From contig NC_135261.1 of assembly GCF_964204865.1 (NCBI RefSeq), forward strand, positions 12,090,001 through 12,154,000: 64,000 nucleotides of DNA. Reading direction: 5' to 3'. The notes beneath the pieces are model-generated. The model saw only the letters and a program-made list of their open reading frames with translations, did not search any database and was not told the origin of the DNA. Below are positions 1,354 to 32,948 of this stretch, one piece after another. Position 1 is the stretch's first letter; each line of letters begins with the position of its first letter. This DNA is from Styela clava. Lineage: Eukaryota. A program made the translations under genes and the position numbers.

Positions 1354-4300
1354 ATGCAAATTCAAAATTTCTTTGAATATGTTGGATCAACCGGATATTA
1401 TCATAAACAATTATATGTGTTGGTCGGCCTAAGTTCGATACCAAACTTACTTATTGCCGTACATTTCGTTTTCACGTTCTACGAGCCAGATTTTCACTGC
1501 ATACCAACAATGGGTTGGAATTTTACACTTTCAGAAAACGTGAGTAATTAGGATAATGGAATATGTTTATCAATGTTTCGCTGAATTAGAACAAAAACAA
1601 TCCATGTCCAATAAATTTGTCTAAGTTACTGGGCACGATGGACTGGTGGTTAAAACGTTCGATTACGAACTTTAATGGGTCATTACTTAGAAGTGGTCTT
1701 GTTCGGAGTCAAAGTCGTATTTATATATCGCATAAGCAAATTGTTTGTAAATATTGTGTTATTAAAAGCAATGGTTACTTTGTAATATGCGATGTAATGA
1801 ATATGTACCGCTGATTATGATAATGTAGAAGGGAGTGATAAAATTACATTACAAATTGCAATATTACGTTTTAATTAATATATATCTATTTCAAATTTTT
1901 GTTCGCACGCTCAGTACGCGATGAATTAAATTCATATGAAACAATTTCCAGGAAAGGATGTAATAATACTTTTTTAATTTTTAAGATTTCTGAGGAATCT
2001 TTCAAGTATATGCTAAATACCTCAATACCGCTGTTACAAGATGCAACGGGAAATTTGAAGAGAAGCCAATGCCTAATGTACAACCTTACCACTCCACCCC
2101 TAGAAAATGAATCGCCGGTTTGTTGATATAGCCTGTCAGGAAATATCTAATTCTATGTTGTCATATAATGTATTCAAGGGTTTACAAAATCCATTATTCA
2201 GATATAGAGTAAATAAATAATATGCATTTTCGATTAGGACTTAACTTTGTAGATATTTATAGTTTCATTAAAACATACCAGTGAGCAAAATATATATTAC
2301 ACAATAAAAAAAACTGTTATTTTCTGATTTTTTTTAGATCGCACCTTCTCCTAACACAACTGACGTCATTCCATGTGTAAATGGATATAAATATCATTTC
2401 AAAGATTACCAAACAAGTTATCTAACGGAAGTAAGATGTGTTGTTCGTTGTGTGTATTTCTATTCCACTACTTGCAGATGTTCCAGTGTGGCCCAACAAA
2501 AACCTTTAAAAAATTCAAACATCGGTCATTAAAATAGTCAATATATTAGTAAATATGTGAAACCAACAACCTTGAATTGATGTCTAATTTTTGTAAAAAG
2601 AATATTACAAGGCACACAAACAGATCTGAAAGAACAGAAAAAACATTAATAGCATTCTTGTTTCAATAATACATTCAGAATCACTTCTATCCATATATAA
2701 CCACGGACTATATTTTATTCAATCTTTCCAAACATCGTTATATCGACCTATAGCCAACCTACTTGGTATCATTGAATAAAAAACTGTCATTTTTTTTAAA
2801 TGAGAAGGTAAATATTTTGTTCTCCGTACATAAATAAGCTTTCACTTTTTTAGTTCGACATCGTTTGTGACGACTCATGGAAAGCTCCTCTTGCTGTCTC
2901 TATATTTCATGTTGGGATGGCAGTTGGGTCCTTATGTGGATGTTTAGCTGACAAGTACGGAATAATGTAGCGTTCTAGTTATTTTATAAAAGATCATAAA
3001 TTATACAACATCCACGTCTGATTAGATTTTGACCAGCATTCCGTCAAGGGTCTAGTTTGGTACGAAATAATAATCTGAACTGAAGAATGGATTACGGTCT
3101 TTATGTAAAAAATACGCCAGTTTTTAGGTATTTTGTCACATATATATTGTAAATTGTGTTCAACATCCCAATTTAATCAAAATATAAACACCATTTGCGA
3201 ATACTCAAATTCTGAACAGTGATCATTCATTGGACAGTTGAACAGTGGATCACCCATGAAAATTATCTGAAACTTAGCATTACTTTCTAAAAAAATACCT
3301 CATGATTCTGTATTTGACATTAAAATAGCATATAATACCTGTCACATTTGTCTTAGATTCGGGCGTAGACCAGTCATTCTCTGGACCGCCATGGCACAGG
3401 TTGTTAGCATGCTCCTCATGTCATTCTCCTGGAACTACATATTTTTTGTATGTTGTATATTTGTATCAGGAGTCGCATCAATTATGAACTATGTTCCCTC
3501 CTTTACATTGAGTAAGTAATAGCAAAGCAAACACGAAAAGAGTAAACGAATGCCACATAAAGACATTCATAAATTAGAATAAAACAAGTTAGAATTGTCA
3601 TATATCTGTTTTAAAACTTGGTTTGATAAACATAGATGAAAGCAATGGGTCAAGAGACCTGGCTGTTTCAACATTACATACCCATTTTGCTAGACTCTAA
3701 AACGAGTCTATATAGATTAGGTGATGACTTCTGGTTGAATTCTGGGATAACCAAGATTCTTAAACTAAAGCAATAATCTGTCGAGCTAATAGTTCTAACT
3801 ATGAGATAATAAATATTATGTCTCCATTGAGTGCAGAGGGCCAATGCTTTAATTAAAAATATATTTCAGTGGCTGAAATGTCTGGGATTGAATGGAGAAA
3901 TTTCTTGTCAATTGGGAGTTGGTTCACATACTCCTGTGGTTATATCTTTGCTGCTGGATTTGCATATTTCTTTCAAACCTGGAGATGGCTTCTCAGAGTG
4001 ATTTCGATATTCAGTTTACTGATTTATCTGCCTTCGTTTTGGTGAAATCAATATTTTCTTTCAAATATATGCTTTCTATTTCTTACATATAGATTATAAC
4101 ATTACGCTACACAAAATGTCAAACTGATATAGGCTAATTCCCAGATTCAGTTTTGCACTATAGCTAGGAATATGTGCTTGGGATTTTTTATTATCATGTA
4201 AGATTCCTTCTATTTTTTGTTTTGATTCTAGTTTGTTGCCTGAATCGGCTCGTTGGCTACTGACTAAAGGAAAACGAGATGAAGCGAACAAAGAACTTAT

Positions 4301-7300
4301 GAAGATAGGGGCATTGAATAATAAACTATGTGATATCCAAACTATGCTGAAAGTATATATATAATTTTAATTTAACGAACACGAAAGTTTGTTCACGGGA
4401 AACATTCCTCAAGTATGCCCAGCAGGAGATTATATCAACGATTTCCACAAAATAGTCACATTATGACATTGAACGAAATATAAACGTTCACAACAATTCG
4501 TTTTTTTCGCATTTATCTTATTTCTAGGCATGATTTTCTTATAAAGCATTATTCGGAGTCTTCTTCGTCGTTTGTTACCAAGGTTTTATATTTGCACCTC
4601 AATGGTGATACCACTTTACCACATCTGGAATCACACATGAAATTTTTGGACAATTTTAATAGTGTCTTTCTGAAAATATTTTTTTTCATATAATTTGATA
4701 TTATTGTTAACAAGTCTAACCGTTTCTATCACTTATTTTCTTAATAAGGAAAATCCTATCGAAATAGATGAAGAAAAGTCAACAGGATTGTGGAAGTCAC
4801 TAAAAGTTATGTTCAGGAAAGAAATCAGGACGAGATGCTTGGTAGCGTGTTTTTCGTGGTGAGTTATAAACGTTTCGGCAATGTTTATGGTACTCCCGAA
4901 GTATGTGAACCAATATGGCGGACACCAGAACGTAATATGTGTACCAGGTTAGGGTTAGGACATAATTTCAGGTACAAATACTACGGAAGTCACTTGGCTA
5001 GTCCCCGAACACGTTATAGAACTGCAATATAGAAAATTGGAATAAAATTAGGTCCCAACCCTAACCTGGTACACATATAACGTTCCGGTGTCAGCAATCT
5101 TGGTTCACATACTTCGGGAACACCATGTTTATTACATCGTTTGCATTGTATTCAATACGACCAATCGGGAAAAAACTACTCTGACATGGAATAAATACAA
5201 CAGATATATATATATGTAATTTATTTGGTGGCTTATTGGCGATGTTGATTCTCTCTATCTCCATTGATTGCGTTGTTGCGCGTTACACATTAGTATTCAT
5301 CTTATTCATTTTAAATCAATTTTCAGTTTATAAGCAATTTTCATATTATATAAACTAAATTATTTTCAACTAAAGAGACTCACTTTATCTACCGATATCT
5401 TAATTTATAATCGTACGTACCTATGTCTTTGCATATAACGATTCCTAGCATGTCGAATTATTTCCAATTTATGTTAATTTTAATGTATATAGCCTGCCTA
5501 GTTAGTTTTAATCAAATTATTATTTAAATTATTATTTAAATTATTATTTAAATATATATTGGGAATTAGTAATATATGATATAAGATATTATCTTATATA
5601 AACTACATGTAACTTATCATACTATTACAGGTTTGTGGCATGCTTTGCGTACTTTGCAATCGCCCTGTATTCTTCATATTTCAGCCAAAATCTCATATTG
5701 AATTGCTTATTTTCTGGACTTTCTGATTTCCCTGGTTTGGCTATGGCTTACTTTCTTGTCAAATATATTGGACGTCCCAGATCAATCCTAGTCTCAATGC
5801 TAATCAGTGGAGTGTCGAGCTTTTCCCTGCCGTTTATACCAAGTGGTAAGTATATATTCCGTTGGGTGGATTCGCAGTCGCACAAATGTAATAACTGCTG
5901 TGTGAATCTAGTTATAATATATTCTGGAGTGAATGCCATAAAGGCAACCAAAAAGAATTCAGGTCTGAGATTTGAAGCTGGATAATATTCAGGATTTATA
6001 TTTGACGTTGCAACTTGGTGTTTTACCCTAAACAACGAGTGTCGCCTGAAAATAACAGAATTCCCGAATAATTAATTATCTATGCATATTGGATGCGCAG
6101 TACAAAATGAAGTGATCCCCCTATTTGTATGTTCTAAAAACTTTCATTCGTTTGAAACTCTAAAATTATGGTGAAGTTAAGGTAAGTATTATTTTTTACT
6201 ATACAGATTTGCATGTCTGGAAAACAGTAGCAGCCATGTTTGGGAAACTTGCAGTTTGTGGAATGTTTTATATTGTTTACATTACGACGGCAGAAATTGC
6301 TCCAACTCCACAAAGAGCAACAATAATGAGCTTTGCTTCGACATGTGGACGTATAGGAGGATTAACTGCACCTTTTCTTATGTATGCAAGTGAGTCTAAA
6401 TTCTCTCACAACTTTTTTTATGAATTTTATTGCAAATAAAGGTGTAATCCGGAAGGTAGTATGTAGGGCTGGGCATTTTCGAATACCTTGTGATTTCAGA
6501 ATCGAATCGAATAACTTTTTCGAATCGAATCGAATCTCGAATACTTGATAATATATAATTTTAAGCGACTTTATTATAGTAATTGATCCTCTCAACAAAT
6601 GAATTACTGAAGACATGGAATAAATCACCCAGATAGATTACTGAGCGTTCACACAGAATAACAAACACGTTTTATCAATAACTCACTACAGAAAATAGTC
6701 ATATGTTAGAATTTCGTTGAATAAATATGACTCTAAGGAAAAAAAAATTGGGAAAAATTGGGAATTCACCTCGACCATTAGCGGAAAGATAAGAACAAGA
6801 TGGCGGTGATTCGAAATTTAGCTCTGAACCGATTCGAATAATTTACTATTCGATTCGATTCGAATATTCGATTCGAAATGCCCAGCCCTAGTAGTATGTA
6901 ATTTTGTGTTGGTGTATCTTATTCAGAAAAAGGACACAAAAGTTTCTTTGCAGACTAAAAACTTCTTTGCAGTGAAATGAATTCTAAGACTAAAATACTA
7001 TTTTGAAATATAATACTTTGTTTATAAATTTTTCTCACTGCAGGTAAAATTCAAGATGTAATTCCTTACGCTGTAATGGGAATATTAGCTGTAATTTGCG
7101 GCCTATTATCAGTTTTATACATCCCGGAGACAAAAGGCGTTCCAATACCTGATACAGTTGAAGAGGCCGCAGCAAATAAAAGGTAAATGTTGATATGAAT
7201 AAATTATTTCATAGTATATTTTTATGGATAAACTCATGATTGCTGTACAATTCATTGAAATGTTTACTTTGGATAATAGTTGTTACAAGTTTCTGGTAAT

Positions 7301-7394
7301 TTTTAGATTCTACGGTTTCAGTGTTTTTAGCAGACCTGATGGAAAGTCAATCAAGACGGCTGTTGACCCTAAACAAACTGAAACACTTCTATGA
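1354..7394 (+). CDS. SLC22-family (MFS) organic ion transporter, 12 coding exons, about 564 aa
   Basis: Exons 1354-1539, 1986-2117, 2338-2430, 2854-2954, 3357-3511, 3870-4041, 4232-4352, 4749-4858, 5631-5845, 6207-6389, 7044-7182, 7307-7394. All junctions are GT-AG with consistent phases (1695 nt). Motifs: Cys-containing first extracellular loop ending in EFDIVC, ADKFGRRP, PESARWL, IGRPRS, EIAPTPQR, PETKG and a C-terminal ETLL (class I PDZ-type). Confidence 0.93.
4889..5124. mobile_element. MITE with GG..CC termini and 8-bp TSD (Merlin-like), in SLC22 intron 8
   Basis: Long imperfect TIRs (GGTACTCCCGAAGTATGTGAACCAA.. / ..TTGGTTCACATACTTCGGGAACACC), flanked by a perfect ATGTTTAT at 4881-4888 and 5125-5132. 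Superfamily inferred from termini and TSD only. Confidence 0.85.
6464..6890. mobile_element. hAT-type MITE (TAGGG termini), in SLC22 intron 10
   Basis: TIR TAGGGCTGGGCATTT / AAATGCCCAGCCCTA, subterminal (TCGAA)n motifs, and a perfect 8-bp TSD GTAGTATG at 6456-6463 and 6891-6898. Confidence 0.9.
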
Positions 7395-8153
7395 AAACTG
7401 GTGACAAAATTATATACCAGCCTTTACCTACTTTGACAAATATATTATTTCAACATCGCATAGTTTGTTATTCCAAAGTCAATCACAGGAAATTTAAAAA
7501 TACCATTTCAGTCCCAGCACAGTGAAAGCCAAACTACGACTTTTACAGCACCGGTTTCTATACAACCATATCGCCACGCCATTTTGAATTTAATCAAAGA
7601 TTTATAGTTGACACATTTGTGGCAAACTGTATGGTATCCTCAAAGTCAACCCTGTTGAAGTTGGTCACAATTCCGTCGCTTACTTAATTTTATGGGTTCC
7701 ACGCCACACGATTTTCGATTCATTGCACTGTGAATAAAGCGCTGGCATAGAAGTTGTGCCCGAGATTTTAACCTACAATGCCAACATAAAGTGCAATGCT
7801 GTAACAACTTGATGATCACTTCTAAAACTTCAGTTTGAAGCATGTTACCAGGTTCTACTAATCCCATCGAATGAGTGAGTACCTATTAACCGAGCAAATG
7901 TTGACAACAAATGTACCAATTGTACACACGGAAAAAAGGATATAAATGGGGCATTTATTAGTATATATAAGTTGGTAGTTTTTCGTCCAGGGTAAACCCA
8001 CTAGTTTGAAAAGTAAACGTTTCAGTAAATGTAGCTCGCGTTGACGTATTGCTCCAATGAGTAAAAATTGTTCACATGATTATTCAAGGCGCATATCATC
8101 GCCCGGCAAAGATTTATGCTGATTGATTACATTGTTTTTGCACTTCATGTACT

Positions 8154-11100
8154 TTACTCGTGACTAGATGGATTTTCTGCTCTCATGGAATTTGGACCTT
8201 TTATATGTTGTGAGTGTGGCTCTATCATATATGATGTGCAAAGTGCTATGGCCATGATGGTTACGTGACTGATCACAATCATTGCAAAATACAATCGCAG
8301 AAAAAATTTATCCATCATTAGAGCAATTTTCTTCCACTCGTTTTCCATTTCTGAATCAATATTCTTCTCTCTTACGTCGTTGATTACATCTTTCATTGTA
8401 TCCAAAACATCAGTTATTTTTCCGAAAATTTCAACCATGTCTGTGTCATTTTTGAGTTTCTTTTTATGAGATTGTAAATTTTCTTCACGTTTATCTGTCG
8501 TCCTGTGAGACGAGTTTCTATTTTGATCTGGGAATCGGTTACGTCTTTTTCGAAAAATAGGTGCTCTAGATTCACTATATGTACATTGTGGTATGCGAAA
8601 TAGAGATTTATCCTCGCCCGTAGGACCACCGTCTGCCCTAATTTCATTTCGATCGTATAGATATTTTCTGAAATGTTTTTTTTGCTAGAAAGAACAAAAA
8701 AGGTATTATTTGACAATGGAATAGATTCTTTTCATAGTTATCTCACAATACAAAAAATATCCTATACAAATATGAATTCAATAACATAAAAACGAGATTA
8801 TCGGTTAGAGACCGAAGACTTATCGATCGAAAGTTAGGGGATCCCCCAAAACAGCGCTCTTACTCCATAGTGACACCTTGTGTCACATCACTAATTAATT
8901 AATAACCTGCTAATTATACGACATAATTCATCCAAAATCAATAGGCTTCTGGTAAGACATATGATGAATGCACATGCAAAATCTGGAGCAGATTCAATCT
9001 CGCTTTCGTGAGATATCGCGTGCATCTAACAGACAGACAAACAAACAGACAGACAAATACCTATCAACATACTAACCGATTAAAATCGATAAGTAATTAG
9101 CCGCGTCACTTACCGGATACCGATTCATGCTTACTTGTGAACCCATTTTCAAAGGTGGAGTTATACATTCTCTGAACAGTGATCCATCACTAAGCGATCC
9201 TGGCGAAACATCATTTACACATTCATCGCATCTATTCAATCTTGCACTTCTTTTAATTGAAAATACTCTTGATCTTTGGTACGGGGGAGAAGAATGATCG
9301 CCATATAAATGCAGTTTGCTGTGTCGAAAATGGTATTCTCTCTTATTTATAATTCTACCGCCAGGTGGCGATGTGTGTTCATCTACTTCTTTCAAACACG
9401 ACAGCATGACGTTACATAAACAACTCTTTGCTACGCGCGGTCGTGGAGATTTGTCTCTATTAGTGGATTTTTTATCGGAAATTCTACCAACACCTAAAAT
9501 AAAATGAGTGGACAATAACAAGTGTAACAACAAGAAGATAAGTTTAAAAATGCTTCCAAAACGCTTTAAAATTCATTGATTACCCGTTGCTTGTTGCTTG
9601 TGGGTTGTATAGAAGTGGGCTGGTTTTGACATTTTCTAGCAGGTATTATTTATCTTTTCTAATTCTCTTCTTTATACTTTGCGCTGTTAACATTTTTAAA
9701 TTATGTGATAGAAGTATCCGTAAACATTATTCACTCTACCAGATTTCTGATCTCCCAAAAAATCTCTAAATTCTTCGAGTTGAGTAACATCAAAAAAGCA
9801 ACAACGACCAAGTTGAAACAAAAATGTTTTGATCCACGTCGGAACCGGTTTACACGGATGATAATATAACCGAAGTACAAGAACTGTCATCAACAAATTT
9901 ACCGCAAGTAGGAAGATACATATCACGTAATACGTCCCTAAAATGAAAATATATGGTATCAGTTAATCAAATTCTTTCTATAGATGATGCTTTATTCATA
10001 ACATTTTTTCGTCTTACCTAAATAAGGTCCAGTCGAAGCTGGAAACATTTCACAAACTGTTAGAAGAAATACCATAAATGTCAAAAGTATTGTAATCTGC
10101 AATCCTACTCTTTCACCGCTATCTGGAGGAAGAAAAAATCCCAGCAGAGCAATTGATGTCAAAAGGATGCTGAATAATTTAAAAATAAGGAATAATTTGT
10201 TTTTTCATTATTTTGCTTGATAGTGGCTGAATGTTTTGAGTTTGTAGGCTAGACATTGGGTTCAAGCTTTGGTTCGTCACGCCAACCTCCTCGAAAAAAA
10301 TAAATATAACAACCCGAATAGACTATCCGTGTAGTCTTTAATTAATGCTCCAATCACTTAAAATAATCATGTTTTCATCTATCAGTAGTAAATTGTTTTC
10401 CCAGAGTCTTGTTAGAAGCAAAGATGCATGCGGTTTTTATTTATGAGAGGAAATGAAATAAAATGAGCATATAAGACTTATGGTTATGGTGTTCTATTTG
10501 ATCAACATCAATATTGAGCAATTAATTATAAAATAGTTAATCACTCAAAGGGCTCTGTCACAAATTCATAAAATGTAATCGTTTTTTCTACCTTGGAAAC
10601 ATCATGCTTTGCATGTAGAAAGATGAATTTCTTCTTAGTGTAACTGTAAAAACAACTTCTGGCCAGTCAGTATAATCAGAAGCAGATTCCACCATTATGC
10701 TCGAATAATTTGCAGTCTGAACAAAACGATCGTAAATAGTAAGTACTTCAGCGATTCATTTGTTTCGAAAACTAATCTCAGAACAACCATTATTTGATAA
10801 TCAGTTAAATATAGGTTATTGTAAAATTCTCGCGAAATAAATCATGTAATCGTATAAACCTTTGAAGAATGAAAATTGAAGTAATATATATAGGTATCAT
10901 AATGTCTTTCTCTATGATATAATATGCTTGTAATAATTATTAGAATACGAAACTGAAAACCAAACAGCTAAACTGTTAAACTAAAAAAGTTTGAATAGAA
11001 ATTATAAACAATGGATAAACTAAAAAAAATATTTTGTGTAAAGCATGCCGTAATCACTTTTTAACCTCGGAATACTAATATACTTTAAATACAACGTCAA

Positions 11101-14100
11101 ATGCGTACGTTAATCATTATTAGTTAATTATATTGTCATATTCCCTTCTACCTCAATAACTTAACGACACCGTAATCCTAATAAAGTCGATTACTGCCAA
11201 AATTATTGAGTGATTTTCATGAAACAGTTTAAAGGTTAACATGCGTAAAAGTTGCTGTCGCGAATAAAACCATTTTTTCGTAAAACATGTTTATCAGAGT
11301 GACCGGATCATGAGCTTATTGATTCAATATCATTATTCATTTTATATTTCTGAAATGCAAATATATTATAATTTTAGGTGATGTTCTACAGTGTTTCTGA
11401 TATATCACCAGTAAACCAGTATACTCTCGGTCGATAAGTTGTATAAACAATACTGGGATATAAATCTCACATAACAGAAAAACTTAAATATTTTGCTTCA
11501 AGTTTCTAAACATGTTGTGGAGAGTTTGCGATAAGAATTGATTAATCCATTCTTCAAAATTATCTTTATATATTTTTTTTGCGTTACATTAATATTATAT
11601 GATCGGGACTATGAATCAGGAGTTACATAATGCCTTGCCCTATATTGTAGTCAAATGCATAAATTTGATAGCAATTATCGACCCGAATCGAAATAAAATA
11701 CCGAATACATGGAGTATTTTCTTAGACATTGAAGTAAATGTTTCCTATCTTCTAGATGCTAAAAAAGCGGCCTCAATTTTTTCCAAAACGATTTCTGATG
11801 GAATTATAATCAGAATCAATTTGATGAAACTGTCTCAAGACATCTCATCAACAAAAATGTATAAAGTTTGCCAAATGTAGACGAACTTTAGTTCCCAAAT
11901 ACTAATACGTGAGAATAAGAGAAAAATATTATTGCAAATTTTAAATATGCATGATTTTACAATTATTTTCGAAACACATTACAACATATTTAATTCCATT
12001 CTGTGTTACTCATATCATACTTTTTGATTGAAATGTTTATTTTTTACGGAGGATAAGTCCTATATGATATACTATACACGATACACTTCCCATCTTCCAC
12101 CTCATTAAGCGCATGCGTCAAACCATCAGGAATATAAATAGAGCCAATAACTCACTGTCGAAGCAAAAATTTGTATTTCGTATTCATAACAATCGCAGAT
12201 ATGTTAAATAAATTAATATACGTTATGGATTCACAGCTTGTAAAACAAAAAATTGTCAAATATTTGTCATTTACATAAGTGAGATTTGTCACATAAGCTA
12301 TACCACCCACCTGTATTTTGACTCCAACGTGTTGTAGTTTCCATTCTCCGGTATTGACAAATACTTGAATATCATTCACCATCTGCTCAGTTTTCCTCTC
12401 GGGCATGAGAGATATCTTGGATCCAGGATGAGTCCATGAACTGATTAAATATAAGTAGCGTAATATTCTAAGTTCAAGCATTTTACAAATCTTTAGGTTT
12501 CTTCAGGTTTGGCATATTAAGATTAAGTGAAGGATTCTCAAACTTTTAGTGTTGTCGAGCCCGTGGAGAGTTCGACTAATATTTACGAAGCCTCACAACA
12601 AATTTATAAAAATAAGAAAAAGCGTTTCTTTCCGATTAATTTTGCTGAGAAAATTAAAATTACTTCATTTAATCACTCGGATGTATTTGGTGCTTGTATT
12701 TAAAAAATATTCAAATTGCGATTCAATTTGTTAATAGAATTATTACAGGCTATAAATAAATCTGAATTTTGTTGATAAATGATATTAACGCTGTAAATTT
12801 GACACTCGACTAACATATCATTGGAGTAGTGTTGAAATGTGACAACAAGGCGGTAATTGAAATATGACATCATCGTTTGGTATTTGAAAATATTCAAATT
12901 GCGGTTCAATTTGTAAATGGGGTTAATACAGGCTATAAATAAATTTAAAGCCTTGTCAAGCTTAAATTTACTACACTAGTTCGACCTTTCCATAAATTGA
13001 CCGATTGCCAAAACTGAAAGATATCAGTAATACTCACACGCTTTTAAAGTAACCAAAAATCACATATAAATGATACACATTTGTCTTATTTTGTGAATTT
13101 TTTAAAATCGATCTCAACTCTAAAAAGATTCAGTATTATTACAGAAAATTAATAGATATACAGTAAAAGTATCAATAACAAAACAAGTATTGAAATTTGG
13201 AAAGATTGGTCCCTTAGTTTTGGAGAGAGGCGATCTTGTCACACTAACAAAAACAGCAATTAAGCAAAACGATCCATATATATGGCTCGTGCCAAATAAT
13301 TATAATACTGTACTCTTGAAAATTGCCATTACTTTAACCATGACTCCTCTAGGGTAATATACCTGAATGTCAGTGTACAATGCTGCACATCGAATGGGAA
13401 ATGCATTGTATTCATTGAACAAGTTGTTGTGAAAGACGTAGGTTCGTGGTACTCGACATGGCCGTCGTGATTGACTTTCACGAAAGGAAGTCTTGGGGAA
13501 TAATCTTTTGTTCCTGTTCTGAAAGAAAAATAGATTAATATAAGATGTGGTTATTTCCGAGAAACCCGAAGAAACTCGCCCGTGGCCTGAAAAGTGACGT
13601 TATTTGATAAATAGGTCGAAAAAGAATTTTGTATAAATTTAGCTTCTTTCTCTTAATACAAACCTGGTAGGAGCCAGATTTTTTTTAATTTCTGAAAATT
13701 CTGTGTTAAAATCGATGGAATGCGAGCTCCCCTAAAAACTCAATTTTGCTAAATTTAATTAAAGGAGTCGAATATCCGATCTAAAACTATCGATTCTTTC
13801 TCGAATCAAACGTTTTTATTTTCATTCTGGCCAGCCTTGACCCGGTATGAAACGCTAGACTATTCGTTATATAGATATAAGTTATAACGCTTTGTTCATA
13901 TACGGTAATAATTGATAAAATGCATGAGGGTGAAGCTCAACATCGGTGTCGGTACGGGCTTTTACCTCCGAGTTAGCTGTAATATTTTTATTCACGGACA
14001 AGCGTGACGGAGGCATTCAATGGGGTGGAATAAAAAAGTCTTCCCCTCCAATAAAAACGAGACAGCAAAATTTAGTGAATTATTGAGTTCCATAGGACCC

Positions 14101-17100
14101 AGAAAAAAAAAATAAAAATAAAGGAACAGCCTAAGATGAACAAAAACAATTGAGCAACCCCATACATAGGTCCAACATTCAGCAGCGCAGCGTTATATAT
14201 TGAAATTATTAAATTCGAATTCGAATTTTTTTGTGAAAATTAAATAAAGGTTCAGGTAGTGTCATCAGTTAAACTCGATTTTTCTATTATTACCACAGCG
14301 ATCGATAAAATGTGGACGATAGTTTGCTTAACGACAATCCTATTGATTTTCTGAAAAAGAAATACTTTAAAGTTTTACTATAATAGATTACAATCAAATT
14401 ATTCTACTATACTATACATTTTATAGCCTAAAATGGAAGTACGCTTTTCAATAAAATTGTCAAATTTTGTTCCCTTTTATCATTCGTTTAAAAAGTTAAA
14501 ATTGTTATGTCTTATTTGTTATATCTATCTATTTTATAAGAGCCGTTGAATGATCATATAGCATCGAACTAGTGAATGTTGCCCGAACTTTGACTCCAGT
14601 TACAATTATTCTCATGCTTGAACATTGAGAATTTGTTTATTTATATTTTGCTGGAGTTGACGCTTAATTAACTACTGGATATTTAAAAGGTACCGGTAGC
14701 TAACTTTAGAATAGTTTAACTCAGCTTTTCGGCACCGTTTTCTGAATCAACTAAAACTCTCCCAAAGACGATTTGACTGTGGAGTGGAATGATTAACACA
14801 TACATTTTTGACAAACAAGTAAAAACTGGAAAATGGATGTTTCCCGAGCCTCGATTCCCTTTTTTTTATTCGTAACAATTACAAATCAACAATAAGTTAT
14901 CAATGACATAGCAATTGAAATTTATGTCGCCGCTCAGACACTTCTTTGGCTCAGACAGGTAGTTTTGCGTGTTATTTTCAGTTTTTGGTTGTGTTTCCAA
15001 ATCCGTATAAACATTCATTTGAATGTTACCACCTCTCAACATTGAACTTTTATAGATGGACATGAAGTCGCATTGGATGTGACTTAAAAAATGTGAATGA
15101 GCGATTCAATTTAATTTACAAATTGATTTGTGTTCAATTTCAAACTTGATTGGAATATTCGAGCACAATGTTAGAATCGTGGTATTTGCTAAACGTTGTT
15201 TTTACTGCATTAAAATTTTCATACTTTCATAACTTTGGTTTCAATCAAATTCGGATTAAGCAATTTGCCAACGATAAATTGCGTTTCAGTTTTGACAATA
15301 TCTTCATGTTTTATCTTTGATGTATTGCCGTTAATGATGAACTTTCTAATAATTCTCGCGCCAATTTTTGACTTGATACCCATGAGACTATTGAATCGAT
15401 ATTTTATGACGTTTAAATGTCAAAATATAGAAAATAGCAATTTTATGGCATGAAATAGATTACTTTGCCGACAAGCATCGATATTTGCCACAAAATTTTT
15501 TTCGCTGTAAGAAATTGTACAAAATTCTCTGGTGTTACGATGTTATCATATTGATTGTATTTATCATTAAAATGTTGGGGGTTCAGCGTTTGGCGAACTA
15601 CAGCATTATCGCTGAAACGCGCCAAAAAGATTGATATCACATTAGAACAGGGATCACATTGTGTGAAGAGTTTACAGATAAAATTAATAGATTCATCCGT
15701 ACATAACGGATTTTAGTTCCAGCTTCATTTTTGATTCATGCAACCAAATATATCAACATCACATCACTAATAGTAGGAAATAAATTATAACAAACTCTTC
15801 TTGGAGGACGATATCTGGTCTCCAAACCGATTCAGCTGGCAGCCATAATTCTTCAAGTCCTTGATGATGTTCTGGTTCCCAACGAAGATAAATGTCTTGC
15901 CAATGCTGAAAGGATGCGTTGTAATTGTTAAATAATATGTAAATTTCATTTGAAAAATAAAACACATTTTAAACGCTTTTCTTACTACCGATGTAGACAC
16001 TGATAACAGAGGTTACATGAAGCTCAAATTTAATAACACTTCCCATTTACTCAAAAGTAATTCAGACTAATGCAATGCTTTTAGTTCCACTTCCCATTTA
16101 CTCAAAAGTAATTCAGACTAATGCAATGCTTTTAGTTGTATTCGCTGGATTTAATATCAACTCAGTGGTATATGTGAGGTATCTAAAACATTGATTTGCA
16201 GTGATTGGCGTATTATCATCTCACGGATGACAGAACGTTAGTCTGATTGCTATTTAAAACAAGTTTTTTGTGTACGGAGAGCTTTTGAATGAATACATTA
16301 AAAACGAACCTGTCTGTACCAGACTAGGCTGCTCAGAATCTGATTTTTTTCGTCCATGTCCAAAACTTGTCGATATATAACGTCAACTTCAACCTCGAGA
16401 ATGTCAGTATCATTACGTACAGGCCTCATTCCTTTGTCATACCCCGTCATTAAAAAGCGTTTCAAAGCATAAAGAGCTGTATTAGTCCCAGATAATTCGT
16501 GGACAGTATCTGTGTTTATCAAAAGAATAAATAAAGAATAAAGAAGCTGTTGAAAAAATTGGTATATTCACTTTCCAAGCGGTATTACGTGATATGTATC
16601 GCTCCGACTAATCTATTTCATATATTTATTATTATGCACAAAATAGTTGGAGGTCATGTAACTCAAAAATGATCACAAGATAATTTGTTAGTGATATACA
16701 AAACGCTGCATGTTTTTTACGGGCACCGACATCTAATTGCTGCTTGTGAAGATTTTATTTCAAATCCAGCGCATCCAATTACGAGAGCTGTCAAATACTA
16801 AAAAAAAATAGAAATCTATACATAGAAGTATTACTCGTAGTACAAAATAATATAACATCGCTTTGATGTAACTATGTCATAGTTACATTAAAAAAATTAC
16901 ATTCAAGAAAGGTTTATGGCGCCTACCGCAACTCATTCTTTTAAGCTCCGACGAAATGCAAACTGCAAAGATCCGTTTATTCAAAATCTTCTCATCGCTT
17001 AGCAATTAGGTCGGGGTGGTAATGTAAGTAAAACACCACTTATACCAAGTTCAAAAAGAGTATTGCTAGAATTTACTGTGTTGTCTAAATTTGATTCCTT

Positions 17101-17294
17101 CAATTATTCATACCTGGGTTCTTGTTTTTGTCGGATGTTCCTAAATTGTTGCTTTGCAGTTTCCCAAGTCCGGGGAGTGAACTTTTTGCGATTGATTTTC
17201 CTCCACTTGATCTTGACTTTGCACTGATTCTAATAGATCCTGTTTGAAATATTTTTATCGTAATTGTAATTAAATATAGGGAGACAATAAGCAT
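8154..17294 (-). CDS. Cation-selective Cys-loop (pentameric) ligand-gated ion channel subunit, 5-HT3-receptor-like, 10 exons, about 713 aa
   Basis: Exons in transcript order: 17114-17294, 16310-16509, 15796-15905, 13363-13518, 12311-12440, 10592-10716, 10018-10169, 9740-9937, 9135-9493, 8154-8684. Phases are consistent (2142 nt). Signal-peptide-like MLIVSLYLITITI; KGMRPVR; DEKNQILSSLVWYRQHW; WRPDIVLQE; Cys-loop CSMNTMHFPFDVQHC; FSSWTH; no vicinal CC in loop C; LPPDSGERVGLQITILL; M4 region EWKKIALMMDKFFL. Exon 1 is the least certain assignment. Confidence 0.9.
8790..9097 (+). mobile_element. Helentron/HINE-like non-autonomous element
   Basis: Subterminal inverted pair ACTTATCGAT (~8818) / ATCGATAAGT (~9085), a (GACA/AACA)n microsatellite at ~9028-9057, and a 3' imperfect hairpin TACTAACCGAT-TAAA-ATCGATAAGTA. 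No TSD seen. Confidence 0.55.
12531..12670 (+). mobile_element. Degenerate left end of the hAT MITE family seen at 35247
   Basis: GGATTCTCAAACTTTTAGTGTTGTCGAGCCC.. aligns by eye with GGGGTTCTCAAACTTTAGGTGTTGCGGAGCCC.. over about 140 bp. Confidence 0.55.
16037..16137. repeat. Perfect ~50-bp tandem duplication (intronic)
   Basis: CACTTCCCATTTACTCAAAAGTAATTCAGACTAATGCAATGCTTTTAGTT occurs twice with a period of 51. Confidence 0.95.
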
Positions 17295-20200
17295 GAAATA
17301 TTGATGTAGGTTCGTCTTTTTGTAAAACAAAAAGTCGTTACACTAGAACAATTTTAATAGGCATTTAGGACAACCATGGTCTTATAAGTAAAAAATAGTG
17401 ATTATTTAGAGTGGCAAAAGATGTAGCCCTAAATCTTTGAAAGTATATTAATTTTTGTCACAAAGTATATGGAAATTTTATTATATGATGCACTTAGTTA
17501 TGGGTAATTTGTTTTCATAATTCTTCAAGTGATACTGGATTGAGTTATTGAGTTAACCTCCATTCTGGTTTGAAATTTTGGATCTGAGGTTTTTCACAAC
17601 AAGACTTTTCAAATATCGTTTTTACTAAAGTTTCAGTAGGTTATTTGGGATGTGTTTTTTTTATAATCCTGGATCGGCCAAAGCATAAAGAAACAATTAT
17701 ATTTCAATTTTATTTCGCATTGAATATGTTTTTCTCAGAGGTAATATATTTCTTCATCTGACTAACAAGAAAATATTTGCTAGGTTGATGAATCCCAATC
17801 AAAGTATTTACTCTTACTACTAGAATTGAACCTCTGCATCAATTTGTATTGTTCTAATATTCCCATATTCTATTATTAATAAGTTTTTAATTTTATAATG
17901 AAGTTAACATTTGACACATGCAGACTATACAGCTTTTGTAGCTTCCTTCATTAATTTACTGCCAAATTTTAGTCAATTTGTACTGGTATTCGTGAACAGC
18001 GCTGATCGGTATTTTTACCGTTCCTACCCGCTTTGGTGCACTGCAATTCTCAAAATAATATACTCACCAGAAAGTATCAGAATAGTAAATATAAGAGCCT
18101 TGAATTTTCCTCTGCAAAATATTTTTCGATCTCGTACATTCTTGTCCATGTCGATTCATTATTAATAAACACACTTATTTTGTCAAAAATCAGAATATTA
18201 TTAAAATTATTAATATTAATAAAATGATCAATTTAAGAAATTAAGGCATTAGTATAAAATTAACATTACCGCTTTAGAAATTTTCTGAAATCATTTAATT
18301 AGCGCAAAGTCAAAAGACATTGACACGGAACTACTGCTAAAATTTTACAAAATGTCTTCTTTGCATGCTTTTTCTCGGAGATGCATCGACGATGAGCGCA
18401 GACTTCCATTACGGTGTAGTCATTTGACAAGTTATAAGCCCATTTCTCTGCAAACAAGGTGGTAACAACTTGAAAACGTTTATTTATTTAAGTTTTGTTT
18501 ATTAAATTTCGAGTATCGTTTTATTACGATGATATCAAACTGAAATAAATTCTTAAAGAGGGATCGGGAAAAAAAATAAAAAATTTTGTTGACCGACAGG
18601 AATTTCTAGTATCAGGCGGAATAAACATCCAAATATTTGTCAGAAATTCCTAATCTTGTAATTAATAAAAAAAACCTTCTTACCTCTACCTATCATTCAC
18701 ACACAATTGCGCCAGGACCAGGATTTCAACCTCTGCAGCATTATTTCATTGATCCTGCTCTTATACTGGACGTGGAAACCTTTTGGGATTTGATTCGACA
18801 AAATGCTATTTAAGAAAAATGTCTAAAATTTCGATCTATTCGTGACGCTTCTCGTTTAATGTGACTTATATTTTTGCAAAAAACGGTCTCAGATTAATTT
18901 AGATGAAACTAGTTTAAAATAATAATACAAAATTTGCTCAATCGAGTAAAAATCATGGGTTGCATAGCAATTGGCATAAACTTACACAGTTTTGTATCTT
19001 CAGATAAAGTGAGTGCTTGATTGGAATTTAATTTTAAAGAAGGAGCATGATTTTAAATTCATTTGTTATGAAAAGAATTATTTTTTACATTATGTGCTCT
19101 ATTTTTATATTGTACAGTGTGTTATATAAAACGGCATTCATCAAATTCCTGTTGGTATATTTTCACCGAGAATTATTTTTCAATGTATATTTGGTGGAAG
19201 TCATACATTTTTTGTTATTCTATAAATACTATTAGCAATAAAGAGTTTCGTTTCCGTGTTCTGTCTGATAGTTTATGTAGTCTGATAATCTGTGATGCTA
19301 ATTAGGTAGAGAAGATTTCTAGCCTTTAAATGATTGTGCCTTCCTGGTTGAAGATTTGCGTCGTAGGTAAAATAAACCCCTATTACGTCCTCCCAAAGTT
19401 CTTGCGTAGCGTTTAAATCCCATTACGATATAAAGTATGAACGCTACATGCTTTATATCTAAAGGGGTTTATCTTGTTTCCATAAACTGAATTATTTTGC
19501 AAAAATCGATAGCATTTGCCTGCATTAATGGATAATAATGCACCGTGAATATAATTTTTAGAAGAAATCTCGTGAGTCTCTTCTCTTTTCTATATATGTT
19601 TGATTTTTAGAGTTTTTTATTTTTAAATAGGTATGACGTATATCGATCGATTAGTGTAAGCTCTTGAAATTTGATTTACACTGTTAAACACATTGTAAAA
19701 TAGCAAGCATTTTACAAACAATCATCTTTCCTAATAACTGATTTACTTAAGGTTTTACCAAACATGGCACGAAGATGAATCATGGCTAACGACTATGAGA
19801 TAAACCATGTCAAATATATAGTTCAAGAAATATCTACTTTTATTTAGATGTTGTATATAATCTCTGCTAGGTTGGTCAAACATGTGAAAGTACCGAGTAA
19901 AACCACGTGCCATAAAAGAATATACGCTGTCTCAGGTTCCGCATTTTCAGCACCACCTTATTTGCTTTTGCGCGGTGGGTCCGTATGAAGATTGGATTGA
20001 ATCACTTCTGTGACATTTTTTAAGCGTTGTACCAAGATTTACAAAATCTTACAACGTTGCAATTAGTACCAACCAGAACCATTTTTCACTATTTCATGGT
20101 TACTTGTACCTCAGGTCGATGCTTGTGCCCTACTCACTTATAATTGCTGAATGATTAACATCTTGAAATAAGTGATTTCACCAAGAAAATGGCAGTTTTT

Positions 20201-32466: not shown

Positions 32467-32948
32467 CACAGGAATACAATAGGTTCCCTGCTGACAAGCA
32501 GCGGGAAGCCTAATAATAGTATTTATTGGTTCAAGTTAAAAGAAAGTTCACCTTAAAATTGGCAACAACGCTATAGGATAACAATGTTATATATATACAA
32601 TATATATTGTACAGAATTTTTTCCATTGGCGACGCTTCAACAAAATATAGACTTAACGTTGGAGGATATTATGGAACAGCAGGAGATTCTCTTTCTTATC
32701 ATAACGGACTCAAATTTTCGACACCGGACCAAGATAACGATATTCATTCATCTAACTGCGCTGCGGGTCATAGAGGTGCGTGGTGGTATCACAGTTGTCA
32801 CATATCCAATCTTAATGGAGAATACGCAGCACCTGTTGGAAAGTACATTACCAAAGGTAACGCATATGGAATCGAATGGCATCGCTGGAATAATGCTTAC
32901 TACTATTCAATGAAATCTGTAGAAATGAAGTTTCGACCAGCTTATTGA
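29868..32948 (+). CDS. Ficolin-like lectin (signal peptide, 6 Gly-X-Y triplets, neck, fibrinogen C-terminal domain), about 310 aa
   Basis: Exons 29868-30114, 30319-30476, 30790-30886, 31036-31132 and 32615-32948 form an open 933-nt frame. Motifs: [70 protein letters not shown]. Confidence 0.92.
31331..31440. mobile_element. Short MITE related to the 4889 element (GG..CC termini, 8-bp TSD)
   Basis: TIR GGACCTCCTGAAGTATGCGCACCAAGATG / CATCTTGGTGCGCATACTTCAGGAGTACC, TSD GAATTTAC at 31323-31330 and 31441-31448, and an internal ACCAGGTTAGGGTT. Confidence 0.88.
31670..32513 (+). mobile_element. Helentron/HINE-like element carrying ~2.2 copies of a 290-bp tandem repeat
   Basis: Units recur at 31730, 32020 and 32310, with an (AAT)n run at ~32427-32463 and a 3' hairpin AGGTTCCCTGCTGACAAGCAGCGGGAAGCCT. 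The 5' AGGCTCCCCGC is complementary to the 3' arm. The element is absent from the paralogous intron at ~63115-63125, with no TSD. Confidence 0.75.

What the first reader, a model, noticed from the sequence alone, without database searches (positions are those of the whole stretch)
8154..17294. A 5-HT3-receptor-like channel rather than a nicotinic subunit, in an invertebrate-type genome
Seen: the spliced protein has KGMRPVR, VDVI, DEKNQILSSLVWYRQHW, PDIVLQE, SPRLPFV..HDG.V, CS....FPFDVQHCTLTFSSWTH and FLPPDSGERV, and lacks the loop C vicinal cysteines. Known: vertebrate 5-HT3A has KGVRPVR, IDVI, DEKNQVLTTYIWYRQYW (loop D W-Y-R), PDILINE (loop A Glu), FPFDVQNCSLTFTSWLH and YLPPNSGERV, whereas nicotinic alpha subunits have a loop A Tyr and YxCC. 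Loop D W/R, loop A Glu and loop B Trp are all kept here. Loop C (NYSSIMVESASDYTDW) is longer and has Trp roughly where 5-HT3A has Tyr. Inference: an excitatory amine-gated channel that would inform the origin of 5-HT3/ZAC receptors, possibly with a ligand other than serotonin.
Basis: partly seen in the sequence, partly recalled or inferred. Interest (0 to 1): 0.75.

Follow-up and report, generated by a model that had tools for sequence, protein, structure and literature searches.

The report
Sea-squirt 5-HT3-like ion channel gene
A sea squirt gene encodes a neurotransmitter-gated ion channel subunit that most resembles the vertebrate serotonin 5-HT3 receptor and already carries that label in the public annotation, but its exact family tie and its activating chemical are still unproven.

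Summary
The minus strand carries an intact 11-exon Cys-loop receptor gene (CDS 18149-8154). It is identical to the public protein XP_039253303.2, "5-hydroxytryptamine receptor 3A-like [Styela clava]".

All quoted motifs are present. The protein is most similar to 5-HT3A: 264 bits against 204 for the best nicotinic chain. It belongs to a family found only in tunicates, where it is the earliest branch. That family lies outside 27 sampled nicotinic-type subunits (support 100/99). Forcing it next to alpha9/10-like subunits is rejected (p 0.00016).

Whether it is the sister of vertebrate 5-HT3 is not settled. With exon fragments of Styela anion channels as outgroup, that topology is best but not significant (dlnL 1.4-3.1). 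The ligand-binding domain favours 5-HT3 and the membrane domain favours nicotinic receptors.

The loop A Glu, loop D Trp/Arg and loop B Trp are kept. Two loop E tyrosines are replaced. The pore residues predict a cation channel. The agonist is unknown, and RNA evidence is thin.

Verdict: a new member of a known kind, of moderate interest.

The parts
18068..18149 (-). CDS exon 1 of the public model (Met1-Gly28 region, signal peptide)
   Evidence: Exact mapping of P0111. A unique GT..AG junction reproduces the protein. No RNA was laid here.
17114..17239 (-). CDS exon 2 (Ser/Lys/Gly-rich N-terminal stretch, conserved GK-TA-K-G motif of the tunicate family)
Evidence: aligned with paralogues.
16310..16509 (-). 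CDS exon 3: alpha1 helix to loop D (KGMRPVR ... DEKNQILSSLVWYRQ)
   Evidence: PF02931 35.7 bits. PDB best hit 5-HT3A 47.1 bits against nAChR alpha4 33.8. 100% match to P0001.
15796..15905 (-). CDS exon 4: HWQD ... WRPDIVLQE (loop A with Gln-Glu-Glu)
   Evidence: PF02931 35.9 bits. PDB best hit nAChR alpha6 33.9 bits against 5-HT3A 27.8.
13363..13518 (-). CDS exon 5: SPRLPFV, loop E, Cys-loop FPFDVQHC, TLTF
   Evidence: PF02931 44.3 bits. PDB 5-HT3A 43.7, alpha7 31.2, ZAC 24.8 bits.
12311..12440 (-). CDS exon 6: loop B SSW and loop F
   Evidence: PF02931 14.5 bits, below the cut-off. PDB 5-HT3A 17.3 against 15.0 bits.
10592..10716 (-). CDS exon 7: loop C (no vicinal Cys), pre-M1 Arg, start of M1
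   Evidence: No Pfam hit. Only weak alpha7 matches, 13.7 bits. Mapping.
10018..10169 (-). CDS exon 8: M1 end, FLPPDSGERV, M2 pore helix (-1' Glu, 0' Arg, 9' Leu, 20' Glu)
   Evidence: PF02932 40.1 bits. PDB alpha7 45.1/41.1 against 5-HT3A 36.0 bits. Site table.
9740..9937 (-). CDS exon 9: M3 and start of the intracellular loop
   Evidence: PDB hits to 5-HT3A only, 20.2 bits. Mapping.
9135..9493 (-). CDS exon 10: intracellular loop, no detectable homology
   Evidence: Part of the public model P0111. One RNA(?) contig, 9084-9252, overlaps it but runs 51 bases past the donor.
8154..8684 (-). CDS exon 11: rest of the intracellular loop, MA helix, M4, C-terminal tail, stop codon at 8156-8154
   Evidence: PF02932 17.7 bits, below the cut-off. 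PDB nAChR alpha6 23.4 bits. RNA(?) contigs at 8100-8308 and 8402-8681.

Best explanation
This is an intact gene for one subunit of a cation-selective pentameric (Cys-loop) ligand-gated channel. It is Styela clava XP_039253303.2.

It is the earliest-branching member, and in its binding loops the most 5-HT3A-like, of a family so far seen only in tunicates. Styela has 3 genes, and Ciona, Clavelina and Phallusia have others. The family lies outside the nicotinic receptors and is nearest in sequence to vertebrate 5-HT3A. I take it as most likely the tunicate counterpart of the 5-HT3 lineage, so that lineage would predate the tunicate-vertebrate split.

**Inferred working.** Five subunits form a pore. 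A cationic agonist binds between subunits against the loop B Trp, a loop C aromatic (Trp), the loop A Glu and the loop D Trp/Arg. Loop C closes and the 9' Leu gate opens. Cations pass, selected by the -1' and 20' Glu rings.

**Shown.** Gene structure, family placement outside the sampled nAChRs, and residue identities.

**Inferred.** Sisterhood with 5-HT3 (my odds about 0.55), cation selectivity, and an amine agonist. I put serotonin itself at about 0.25.
For: - **Exact 11-exon mapping.** Each junction has a unique GT..AG solution and there is no internal stop.
- **Domains.** Pfam LBD and TM domains are found exon by exon.
- **Nearest family is 5-HT3A.** Whole-protein PDB search gives 264 against 204 bits; BLASTP gives 37.9% identity and 258 bits against 231. 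4 of 8 exons score best to 5-HT3A.
- **Tunicate family is monophyletic** (100/99), with the query as sister to the other 10 rows (99/95). The split {tunicate + vertebrate 5-HT3} | {27 nAChR-like} has support 100/99.
- **Nesting is rejected.** Holding the family with deuterostome alpha9/10-like subunits costs dlnL 49.9, p-AU 0.00016.
- **Rooted comparison.** Tunicate+5-HT3 is the best of three topologies under LG (RELL 0.52) and C20 (0.60). It is also best with 5-HT3A rows only and with LBD columns only.
- **Polarised characters.** The loop A Asn->Glu change is shared by 9 of 9 tunicate and 8 of 8 5-HT3 rows and 0 of 17 nAChR-like rows; the anionic outgroup has Asn. With exact residues, characters split 3 for tunicate+5-HT3, 0 for tunicate+nAChR and 1 for 5-HT3+nAChR.
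- **Pore residues:** -1' E, 0' R, 9' L, 20' E.
- **Parsimony argument (inference).** If the tunicate family and vertebrate 5-HT3 are not counterparts, each must be an old lineage lost everywhere except in one of two sister subphyla.
Against: - The root is not resolved. Tunicate+nAChR is only 1.4 (LG) or 3.1 (C20) lnL units worse, p-AU 0.51/0.43.
- With membrane-domain columns alone, tunicate+nAChR is best and tunicate+5-HT3 is 4.3 units worse.
- With a reduced alphabet, polarised characters run 1: 5: 4 against the reading.
- The tunicate profile scores 5-HT3A at 293-313 bits, but the best nAChR-like row reaches 296.
- Exons 4, 8 and 11 score better to nAChR chains.
- The outgroup was only 15 exon fragments, covering 223 of 379 columns. 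The tree holds no alpha7, alpha1-6/beta, ZAC, 5-HT3C-E or cyclostome sequence.
- Loop E Tyr144 and Tyr154 (numbering of Rao et al.) are Lys and His, and loop A Asn is Gln.
- Expression rests on three low-depth contigs in one run whose RNA label is a guess. One of them is unspliced at exon 10's donor.
Confidence: 0.55

Rival explanations
1. The tunicate family is a separate old branch of cationic Cys-loop receptors. It would be either sister to all nicotinic receptors or a third lineage. Its 5-HT3-like binding-domain motifs would then be retained ancestral states or convergence, not shared descent with 5-HT3.
For: - The three groups meet in a near star (stems 1.82+0.08, 0.89 and 0.96).
- Tunicate+nAChR is not rejected (p-AU 0.43-0.51) and is the best topology for membrane-domain columns.
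- Reduced-alphabet characters run 5 for tunicate+nAChR against 1 for tunicate+5-HT3.
- Loop A Tyr, as in nAChRs, is present in 8 of 9 tunicate rows. Loop D Trp/Arg also occurs in most alpha9/10-like rows and in the anionic outgroup's Arg.
Against: - It needs an old lineage kept only in tunicates and a second one kept only in vertebrates, which means many losses (inference).
- Whole-protein similarity favours 5-HT3A by 60 bits.
- The LBD columns, the full data set and the 5-HT3A-only data set all prefer tunicate+5-HT3.
- The loop A Asn->Glu change is shared and derived.
Confidence: 0.3
2. It is a divergent non-alpha-type nicotinic subunit. It would sit in an nAChR subgroup that I did not sample (alpha7/8, muscle or neuronal beta types) and would be gated by ACh or act as a structural partner.
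For: - Exon 8 (M1-M2) scores best to alpha7, 45.1 against 36.0 bits. Exon 11 (MA-M4) scores best to alpha6. Exon 4 scores best to alpha6.
- Public names of the paralogues are 'alpha-9-like', 'beta-3-like' and 'acr-16-like'.
- The aromatic box is largely compatible with ACh: loop B Trp, loop C aromatics, loop D Trp.
Against: - Solved alpha7, alpha4, alpha3, alpha6, beta2, beta4 and muscle chains all score 204 bits or less, against 258-264 for 5-HT3A.
- All 27 sampled nAChR-like rows exclude the family at 100/99.
- AU rejects union with alpha9/10-like rows.
- The gene lacks the loop A Tyr and YxCC, and has Glu where all 17 nAChR-like rows have Asn or Thr.
Confidence: 0.08
3. The locus is not a working receptor gene. 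It would be a decaying copy, or a gene model that strings together exons never spliced this way.
For: - No RNA contig covers any ligand-binding or M1-M3 exon in the four runs laid.
- One contig crosses exon 10's donor unspliced.
- Exon 10 and the first half of exon 11 have no homology to anything.
- The earlier public model (594 aa) lacked M4.
Against: - The 2169-nt frame is open over 11 exons, each junction with a unique canonical GT..AG solution.
- All superfamily-invariant residues are kept: Cys-loop Cys pair, FPFD, pre-M1 Arg, M1 Pro, 9' Leu.
- Fragments at 79% and 72% identity from other assemblies suggest conserved orthologues.
- Contigs lie on the last exon and 3' end, and one has 16 loose letters where exon 10 would join.
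Confidence: 0.05

Closest known systems
Vertebrate 5-HT3A receptor subunit (HTR3A; solved structures such as 4PIR, 6DG8, 8AXD)
   Same: - It is the best hit for the whole protein: 264 bits and 37.9% identity over 335 residues to sturgeon 5-HT3A.
- Shared residues and motifs: WYRQ in loop D, loop A Glu, the SPxxP(F/Y)V motif, (S/T)-S-W in loop B without the nicotinic Gly, no vicinal Cys, GER at the pore mouth, and F-R-x-Y in M4.
   Different: - Loop E Tyr144/Tyr154 are Lys/His, loop A Asn is Gln, and loop C Tyr is Trp in a loop about 6 residues longer.
- The M2-M3 loop is two residues shorter, and pre-M1 reads RRNSS.
- The three MA-helix arginines align with Ser, Asn and Lys. Their role in limiting conductance is recalled, not tested here.
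- The intracellular loop is about 250 residues long.
- Clade membership is unresolved.
Tunicate paralogues (Styela LOC120331651 and 'alpha-9-like'; Ciona 'beta-3-like', 'acr-16-like', 'alpha-9-like'; Clavelina '5-HT3A-like' and others; Phallusia 'beta-3-like')
   Same: - They form one clade with the query at 100/99 and are 40-52% identical to it.
- Invariant features: loop A Glu, RRNSS-x-x-MQSM, FLPPDSGER, and the short M2-M3 loop PASTGPYLG.
   Different: - The aligned paralogues (P0004, P0024, P0129) carry roughly 30-45-residue inserts in loop C, which the query lacks.
- Most have loop A Tyr where the query has Gln. 5 of the other 8 rows in the table have lost the loop D Trp.
- The paralogue exons on C6 and C2 break at other places than the query's.
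Nicotinic acetylcholine receptor subunits (alpha9/alpha10-like, alpha7)
   Same: - Same fold and same cationic pore signature. The M1-M2 exon is closest to alpha7.
- The MA-M4 segment, with EWK-x-(I/V)A, is closest to nAChR chains.
   Different: - No YxCC, and no loop A Tyr-Asn.
- Excluded from the sampled clade.
- 60 bits less similar than 5-HT3A.
Zinc-activated channel (ZACN; 8YX6)
   Same: Cationic Cys-loop subunit without vicinal Cys.
   Different: Only 24.8 bits on the Cys-loop exon, against 43.7 for 5-HT3A. It is not among the best 60 chains, all 148 bits or more, for the whole protein. No ZAC sequence could be put in a tree.

Membership tests
Cys-loop / pentameric ligand-gated ion channel superfamily | Neur_chan_LBD plus Neur_chan_memb domains, a Cys-loop of two Cys 13 residues apart with FPFD, four TM helices, pre-M1 Arg | tested here: met
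   PF02931 is found on exons 3-6 (three above the cut-off) and PF02932 on exons 8 and 11. C-x13-C with FPFDVQHC, pre-M1 RR and M1 Pro are seen.
Cation-selective branch (nAChR / 5-HT3 / ZAC) | -1' Glu without the -2' Pro insertion of anion channels, and an acidic 20' ring | tested here: met
   DSGERV: -1' E, 0' R, 9' L, 20' E. The Styela anion-channel exons have one extra residue (A-P-A-R) here. Selectivity itself was not measured.
Nicotinic receptor, alpha type | Vicinal Cys-Cys in loop C and loop A Tyr | tested here: not met
   Loop C is TANYSSIMVESASDYTDWPEV with no Cys. The loop A position holds Gln.
Nicotinic receptor family (any subunit type) | Placement inside the nAChR clade | tested here: not met
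   All 27 nAChR-like rows exclude it at 100/99. AU p 0.00016 against union with alpha9/10-like rows. Caveat: alpha7, alpha1-6, beta and muscle types were not in the tree and were compared only by PDB score.
5-HT3 receptor family | Forms a clade with vertebrate HTR3 genes in a rooted tree | tested here: inconclusive
   It is the best of three topologies, but by dlnL 1.4-3.1, p-AU of the alternatives 0.16-0.51. LBD columns are for it and TMD columns against.
5-HT3 receptor family | Nearest known family by sequence | tested here: met
   264 against 204 bits and 258 against 231 bits. The margin is small in profile terms: 293-313 against up to 296.
5-HT3 receptor family | Binding-site residues of 5-HT3A: loop D Trp and Arg, loop A Glu, loop B Trp, loop C Tyr and Glu, loop E Tyr144 and Tyr154 (numbering of Rao et al. 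2023, section 18) | tested here: inconclusive
   Trp, Arg, Glu, Trp and Glu are kept. Loop C Tyr is Trp. Loop E Tyr144 is Lys and Tyr154 is His. 5-HT3B and the amphibian 3A-like rows also differ at some of these sites.
5-HT3 receptor family | Gated by serotonin and blocked by setrons | not testable with these tools
   Needs expression and electrophysiology.
5-HT3 receptor family | Exon-intron structure shared with vertebrate HTR3A | not tested
Zinc-activated channel | Closest similarity to ZACN | tested here: not met
   24.8 bits on one exon. Absent from the best 60 chains.

The most novel reading that the evidence does not exclude
The tunicate family is the true counterpart of the vertebrate 5-HT3 genes, and this least-derived member is a serotonin- or tryptamine-gated cation channel. 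Ionotropic serotonin signalling would then date from before the tunicate-vertebrate split. Its paralogues, with long loop C inserts and lost loop D Trp, would have moved to other, unknown agonists. That would make a natural series for learning how 5-HT3-type pockets change ligand.
Probability: 0.2. Interest if true: 0.6.

Novelty: new member of a known kind. Interest (0 to 1): 0.4.

Why it matters
5-HT3 receptors are the only ionotropic serotonin receptors of vertebrates and are drug targets, yet where they came from is unclear.

- A 2023 survey of 5-HT3 homologues reported no tunicate among its first BLAST hits (PMC9977066, Discussion passage).
- A 2019 nAChR study set aside Ciona hits that grouped with HTR3A/B without describing them (PMC6354393, Methods passage).

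This gene shows that tunicates carry a small family of 5-HT3-like subunits. It also picks out the member that keeps most of the 5-HT3A pocket. That gives a concrete, cheap experiment: express it and screen amines. It also gives the missing taxon for a properly rooted phylogeny.

If it proves serotonin-gated, the origin of 5-HT3 moves back to the common ancestor of tunicates and vertebrates. If not, it is one more orphan Cys-loop subunit.

Tried and rejected
1. **My first gene model.** In some searches I spliced exon 9 straight to an acceptor at 8440, giving a short intracellular loop. I rejected this because the public protein maps exactly with exon 10 and a last exon starting at 8684. An RNA(?) contig also runs unbroken across 8440.

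2. **My first guess of a short exon 1 ending after '...IFQT'.** This was wrong. The frame continues to ...NKNP.

3. **Outgroup hunting.**
   - tblastn of a 5-HT3A against plasmids found nothing.
   - The one genome-contig scan returned a single nAChR-like exon in a 'Metamycoplasmataceae MAG' contig, probably eukaryotic contamination.
   - The genome search 'relatives' is not available for this genome.
   - No Styela pLGIC exon is long enough to seed a protein search.
   - I therefore used 15 exon fragments of four Styela anion-channel genes, each as its own row.
   - MAFFT misplaced five fragments, wholly or in part. I re-placed them residue for residue on a paralogous fragment of equal length, and masked unalignable ends.

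4. **Acanthaster 'alpha-9-like' P0297.** It scored 496 bits to the tunicate profile and looked like a non-tunicate member. It is a tandem fusion of two ordinary YxCC nAChR subunits. Rejected.

5. **Profile classification.** Tunicate proteins score higher on the broad nAChR-like profile than on the narrow 5-HT3 profile, but so do the 5-HT3 sequences themselves. This test does not discriminate.

6. **Synteny.** By my recall none is a neighbour of vertebrate HTR3 genes. Dropped.

7. **A bootstrap run on the rooted data set.** It died with its script. The RELL proportions stand in its place.

8. **Rows dropped from the trees.**
   - Left out of the careful tree: Watersipora, Patella, Holothuria, P0067 and one amphioxus row (long branches), plus two near-duplicates.
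   - In one search Watersipora and Patella sat just outside tunicate+5-HT3 (SH-aLRT 90).

9. **Literature: 7 searches (and the terms within).** None found a description of a tunicate 5-HT3-like family. The following may list these Ciona sequences: the species tables of PMC9977066, the additional files of PMC6354393, and the full trees of PMC4795631 and of the octopus preprint.


Full report
**What is in the sequence.**

The minus strand between 8154 and 18149 holds a Cys-loop receptor gene.

Exon translations, searched one by one, gave these Pfam results (8 exons searched):
- Exons 3, 4 and 5 match Neur_chan_LBD above its cut-off.
- Exon 8 matches Neur_chan_memb above its cut-off.
- Exons 6 and 11 match these families below the cut-offs.
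- Exons 7 and 9 have no match.

Whole-protein analyses used a stored public protein, described next.

**Whose gene it is.**

I ran a phmmer search of exon 3 alone against 1.84 billion representative proteins. It gave 110 hits at E <= 0.001, and the best was 100% identical.

Cluster look-up names that hit XP_039253303.1, with a 722-residue successor XP_039253303.2, "5-hydroxytryptamine receptor 3A-like [Styela clava]". The 722-residue protein (P0111) maps on the window without a single mismatch in 11 pieces. Each of the ten junctions has exactly one GT..AG solution that reproduces the protein.

The CDS exons are: 18149-18068, 17239-17114, 16509-16310, 15905-15796, 13518-13363, 12440-12311, 10716-10592, 10169-10018, 9937-9740, 9493-9135 and 8684-8154. 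Together they make 2169 nt.

The window is G000:C16:12090001-12154000. The older 594-residue model lacks M4.

**Gene model and RNA.**

My own first model skipped exon 10 and began the last exon at 8440. I withdrew it.

Four runs whose RNA label is only a guess were laid on 8100-14000. One run (X1) has low-depth contigs at three places:
- 8100-8308.
- 8402-8681. This runs unbroken across 8440, and its first 16 letters are loose just where exon 10 would join at 8684.
- 9084-9252. This crosses exon 10's donor at 9135 unspliced.

No contig lies on any ligand-binding or M1-M3 exon. Expression is therefore weakly indicated and splicing is not shown.

**Similarity, exon by exon and whole.**

Bits to the best 5-HT3A chain against the best nAChR chain in PDB:

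| Exon | 5-HT3A | nAChR | Other |
|---|---|---|---|
| 3 | 47.1 | 33.8 | |
| 4 | 27.8 | 33.9 | |
| 5 | 43.7 | 31.2 | ZAC 24.8 |
| 6 | 17.3 | 15.0 | |
| 7 | none | 13.7 | |
| 8 | 36.0 | 45.1 | |
| 9 | 20.2 | none | |
| 11 | none | 23.4 | |

The stored whole protein scores 258-264 bits to the 16 distinct 5-HT3A sequences. It scores 204 bits or less to every nicotinic chain. ZAC is not among the best 60.

BLASTP gives the following:
- tunicate paralogues: 34.6-51.7% identity;
- sturgeon 5-HT3A: 37.9% over 335 residues, 258 bits;
- the best nAChR, an alpha10-like: 231 bits.

**A tunicate family.**

Word-indexed searches with the protein and with a profile of 11 family members found high-scoring relatives only in Styela, Ciona, Clavelina and Phallusia. 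Their public names are inconsistent: alpha-9-like, beta-3-like, acr-16-like, 5-HT3A-like and uncharacterized.

An Acanthaster protein that scored 496 bits is a fusion of two ordinary nAChR subunits. It is not a member.

Styela has three genes of the family: this one, and paralogues on contigs C6 and C2. Three aligned paralogues carry long loop C inserts that the query lacks.

**Unrooted phylogeny.**

The careful tree had 50 rows and 492 columns, under LG+C20 PMSF.
- The tunicate family with the query has support 100/99.
- The query is sister to the other ten rows (99/95).
- The split between {tunicate family + 12 vertebrate 5-HT3 rows} and {27 nAChR-like rows} has support 100/99.

Holding the family together with deuterostome alpha9/10-like subunits costs 49.9 lnL units, p-AU 0.00016. 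I named that group after seeing the tree.

Two limits apply. Three monophyletic groups meeting at one node say nothing about which two are sisters. The sample also lacks alpha7, alpha1-6, beta and muscle types.

**Rooting.**

No full-length outgroup protein could be obtained. I therefore took 15 exon fragments of four Styela anion-channel genes, kept as separate rows constrained to one clade. The alignment had 34 full rows and 379 columns, of which 223 carry outgroup residues.

Tunicate+5-HT3 is the best of the three topologies, but nothing is rejected:

| Topology | dlnL, LG / C20 | p-AU, LG / C20 |
|---|---|---|
| tunicate + 5-HT3 | best (RELL 0.52 / 0.60) | |
| tunicate + nAChR | 1.4 / 3.1 | 0.51 / 0.43 |
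| 5-HT3 + nAChR | 9.6 / 9.0 | 0.17 / 0.16 |

Sensitivity runs:
- With 5-HT3A rows only, the order holds, with gaps of 1.1 and 2.2.
- With ligand-binding-domain columns only, tunicate+5-HT3 leads by 4.8 and 7.8.
- With membrane-domain columns only, tunicate+nAChR leads and tunicate+5-HT3 is 4.3 behind.

Polarised site patterns, counted for tunicate+5-HT3, tunicate+nAChR and 5-HT3+nAChR in that order:
- Exact residues: 3 : 0 : 1.
- Reduced alphabet: 1 : 5 : 4.

The sister relation to 5-HT3 is therefore the best single reading, but it is not established. What tips my odds to about 0.55 is a loss-count argument. Otherwise two old lineages would each survive in only one of two sister subphyla.

**Residues and likely working.**

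The site table uses the numbering of Rao et al. 2023; I read their section 18 in full.

| Site | Query | Comparison |
|---|---|---|
| Loop D | W-Y-R | |
| Loop A | Q-E-E | Glu in 9 of 9 tunicate and 8 of 8 5-HT3 rows; 0 of 17 nAChR-like rows |
| Loop B | S-S-W | No nicotinic Gly |
| Loop F | Asp kept | |
| Loop C | Trp and Glu | 5-HT3A has Tyr235 and Glu237 |
| Loop E | Lys and His | 5-HT3A has Tyr144 and Tyr154 |

The principal face thus looks 5-HT3-like and the complementary face only partly so.

The pore has -1' Glu, 0' Arg, 9' Leu and 20' Glu, and it lacks the extra residue of anion channels. I infer a cation channel.

In the weak MA-helix alignment, the three arginines of 5-HT3A align with Ser, Asn and Lys. 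From recalled work on 5-HT3A/B conductance, this would predict a larger unitary conductance.

The agonist cannot be read from sequence. A cationic amine is the most likely class. I put serotonin at about one in four, and ACh is not excluded.

**Literature.**
- **Rao et al. 2023 (PMC9977066).** I saw the abstract, section 18 and one Discussion passage. They report 5-HT3 homologues in 11 phyla, but "no species from subphylum Urochordata" among first hits. They state that Glu130 was found only in Chordata.
- **Pedersen et al. 2019 (PMC6354393).** I saw 12 of its 22 matching passages. They excluded amphioxus and Ciona TBLASTN hits that grouped with human HTR3A/B in a neighbour-joining tree. Such sequences were therefore noticed but not described.
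- **Other papers.** I saw passages only of Jaiteh et al. 2016 (PMC4795631), the alpha9alpha10 review (PMC8634148), PMC7017327, PMC7292288, PMC6896357 and the octopus preprint. None mentions a tunicate 5-HT3-like family.
- **Searches.** These were. Supplements were closed and may list these Ciona sequences.

- The look-up of encoding contigs, so there was no vertebrate gene structure for an intron comparison.
- Structure prediction, so there is no model and no fold search.
- The Atlas for new sequences.

**Verdict.**

'5-HT3-like, not nicotinic' holds as a description and matches the existing public label. 'A member of the 5-HT3 clade' and 'amine-gated' remain open.

It is a new member of a known kind. 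It is of moderate interest because it is the most 5-HT3A-like gene of an undescribed tunicate family and is directly testable.

Noticed in passing
window 8790-9110 (intron 10 of the receptor gene): A dispersed repeat of about 308 bp. The first look found 2688 candidates in the genome, and the 40 copies scored are 93-96% identical. It is very deeply represented in the RNA(?) contigs of all four runs laid, with summed depth up to 33,535. No Rfam family matches in 7000-19000. It looks like a young SINE- or MITE-like element.
   Followed up: partly
window 26492-26887 (+) and 32607-32948 (+): Two open frames encode the C-terminal half of a fibrinogen C-terminal globular domain (PF00147, 99 and 103 bits). 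They are probably two neighbouring ficolin/FREP-like genes.
   Followed up: no
window about 1354-7186 (+): A multi-exon transporter-like gene ends 968 bases from the receptor's stop codon, tail to tail. One exon gives a weak MFS_1 match (E 0.0037). The last exon's '...PETKGVPIPDT...' tail recalls SLC22-type organic ion transporters; that resemblance is recalled, not tested.
   Followed up: partly
P0004, P0024, P0129 (tunicate paralogues), alignment A1 columns about 300-346: Paralogues of the query carry inserts of roughly 30-45 residues inside loop C, the lid of the agonist site. 5 of the 8 other tunicate rows in the site table have lost the loop D Trp. The family may have diversified in ligand.
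   Followed up: partly
P0001 against P0111: The first public model of this gene (XP_039253303.1, 594 aa) ends inside the intracellular loop and has no M4. It also differs at two residues from the window. Version .2 (722 aa) matches the window exactly.
   Followed up: yes
L001 (contig CBDHHR010001141.1, 'MAG: Metamycoplasmataceae bacterium'): A bacterial metagenome-assembled genome holds a stretch 38% identical to residues 234-340 of a 5-HT3A, that is the M1-M2 region of an animal Cys-loop receptor. This is most likely host or eukaryotic contamination of the bin.
   Followed up: no
P0297 (Acanthaster planci 'alpha-9-like', 915 aa): The public model is two complete YxCC nicotinic subunits fused head to tail. 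It is probably two tandem genes merged by the predictor.
   Followed up: partly
G000:C16:20208843-20224000 (L022, L017): Two GABA-A-type anion-channel genes lie head to head. One has YPLDEQNC (beta-like) on the minus strand and one has FPMDVHTC on the plus strand. A glycine-receptor-like gene lies at C18:6082803-6091900.
   Followed up: partly
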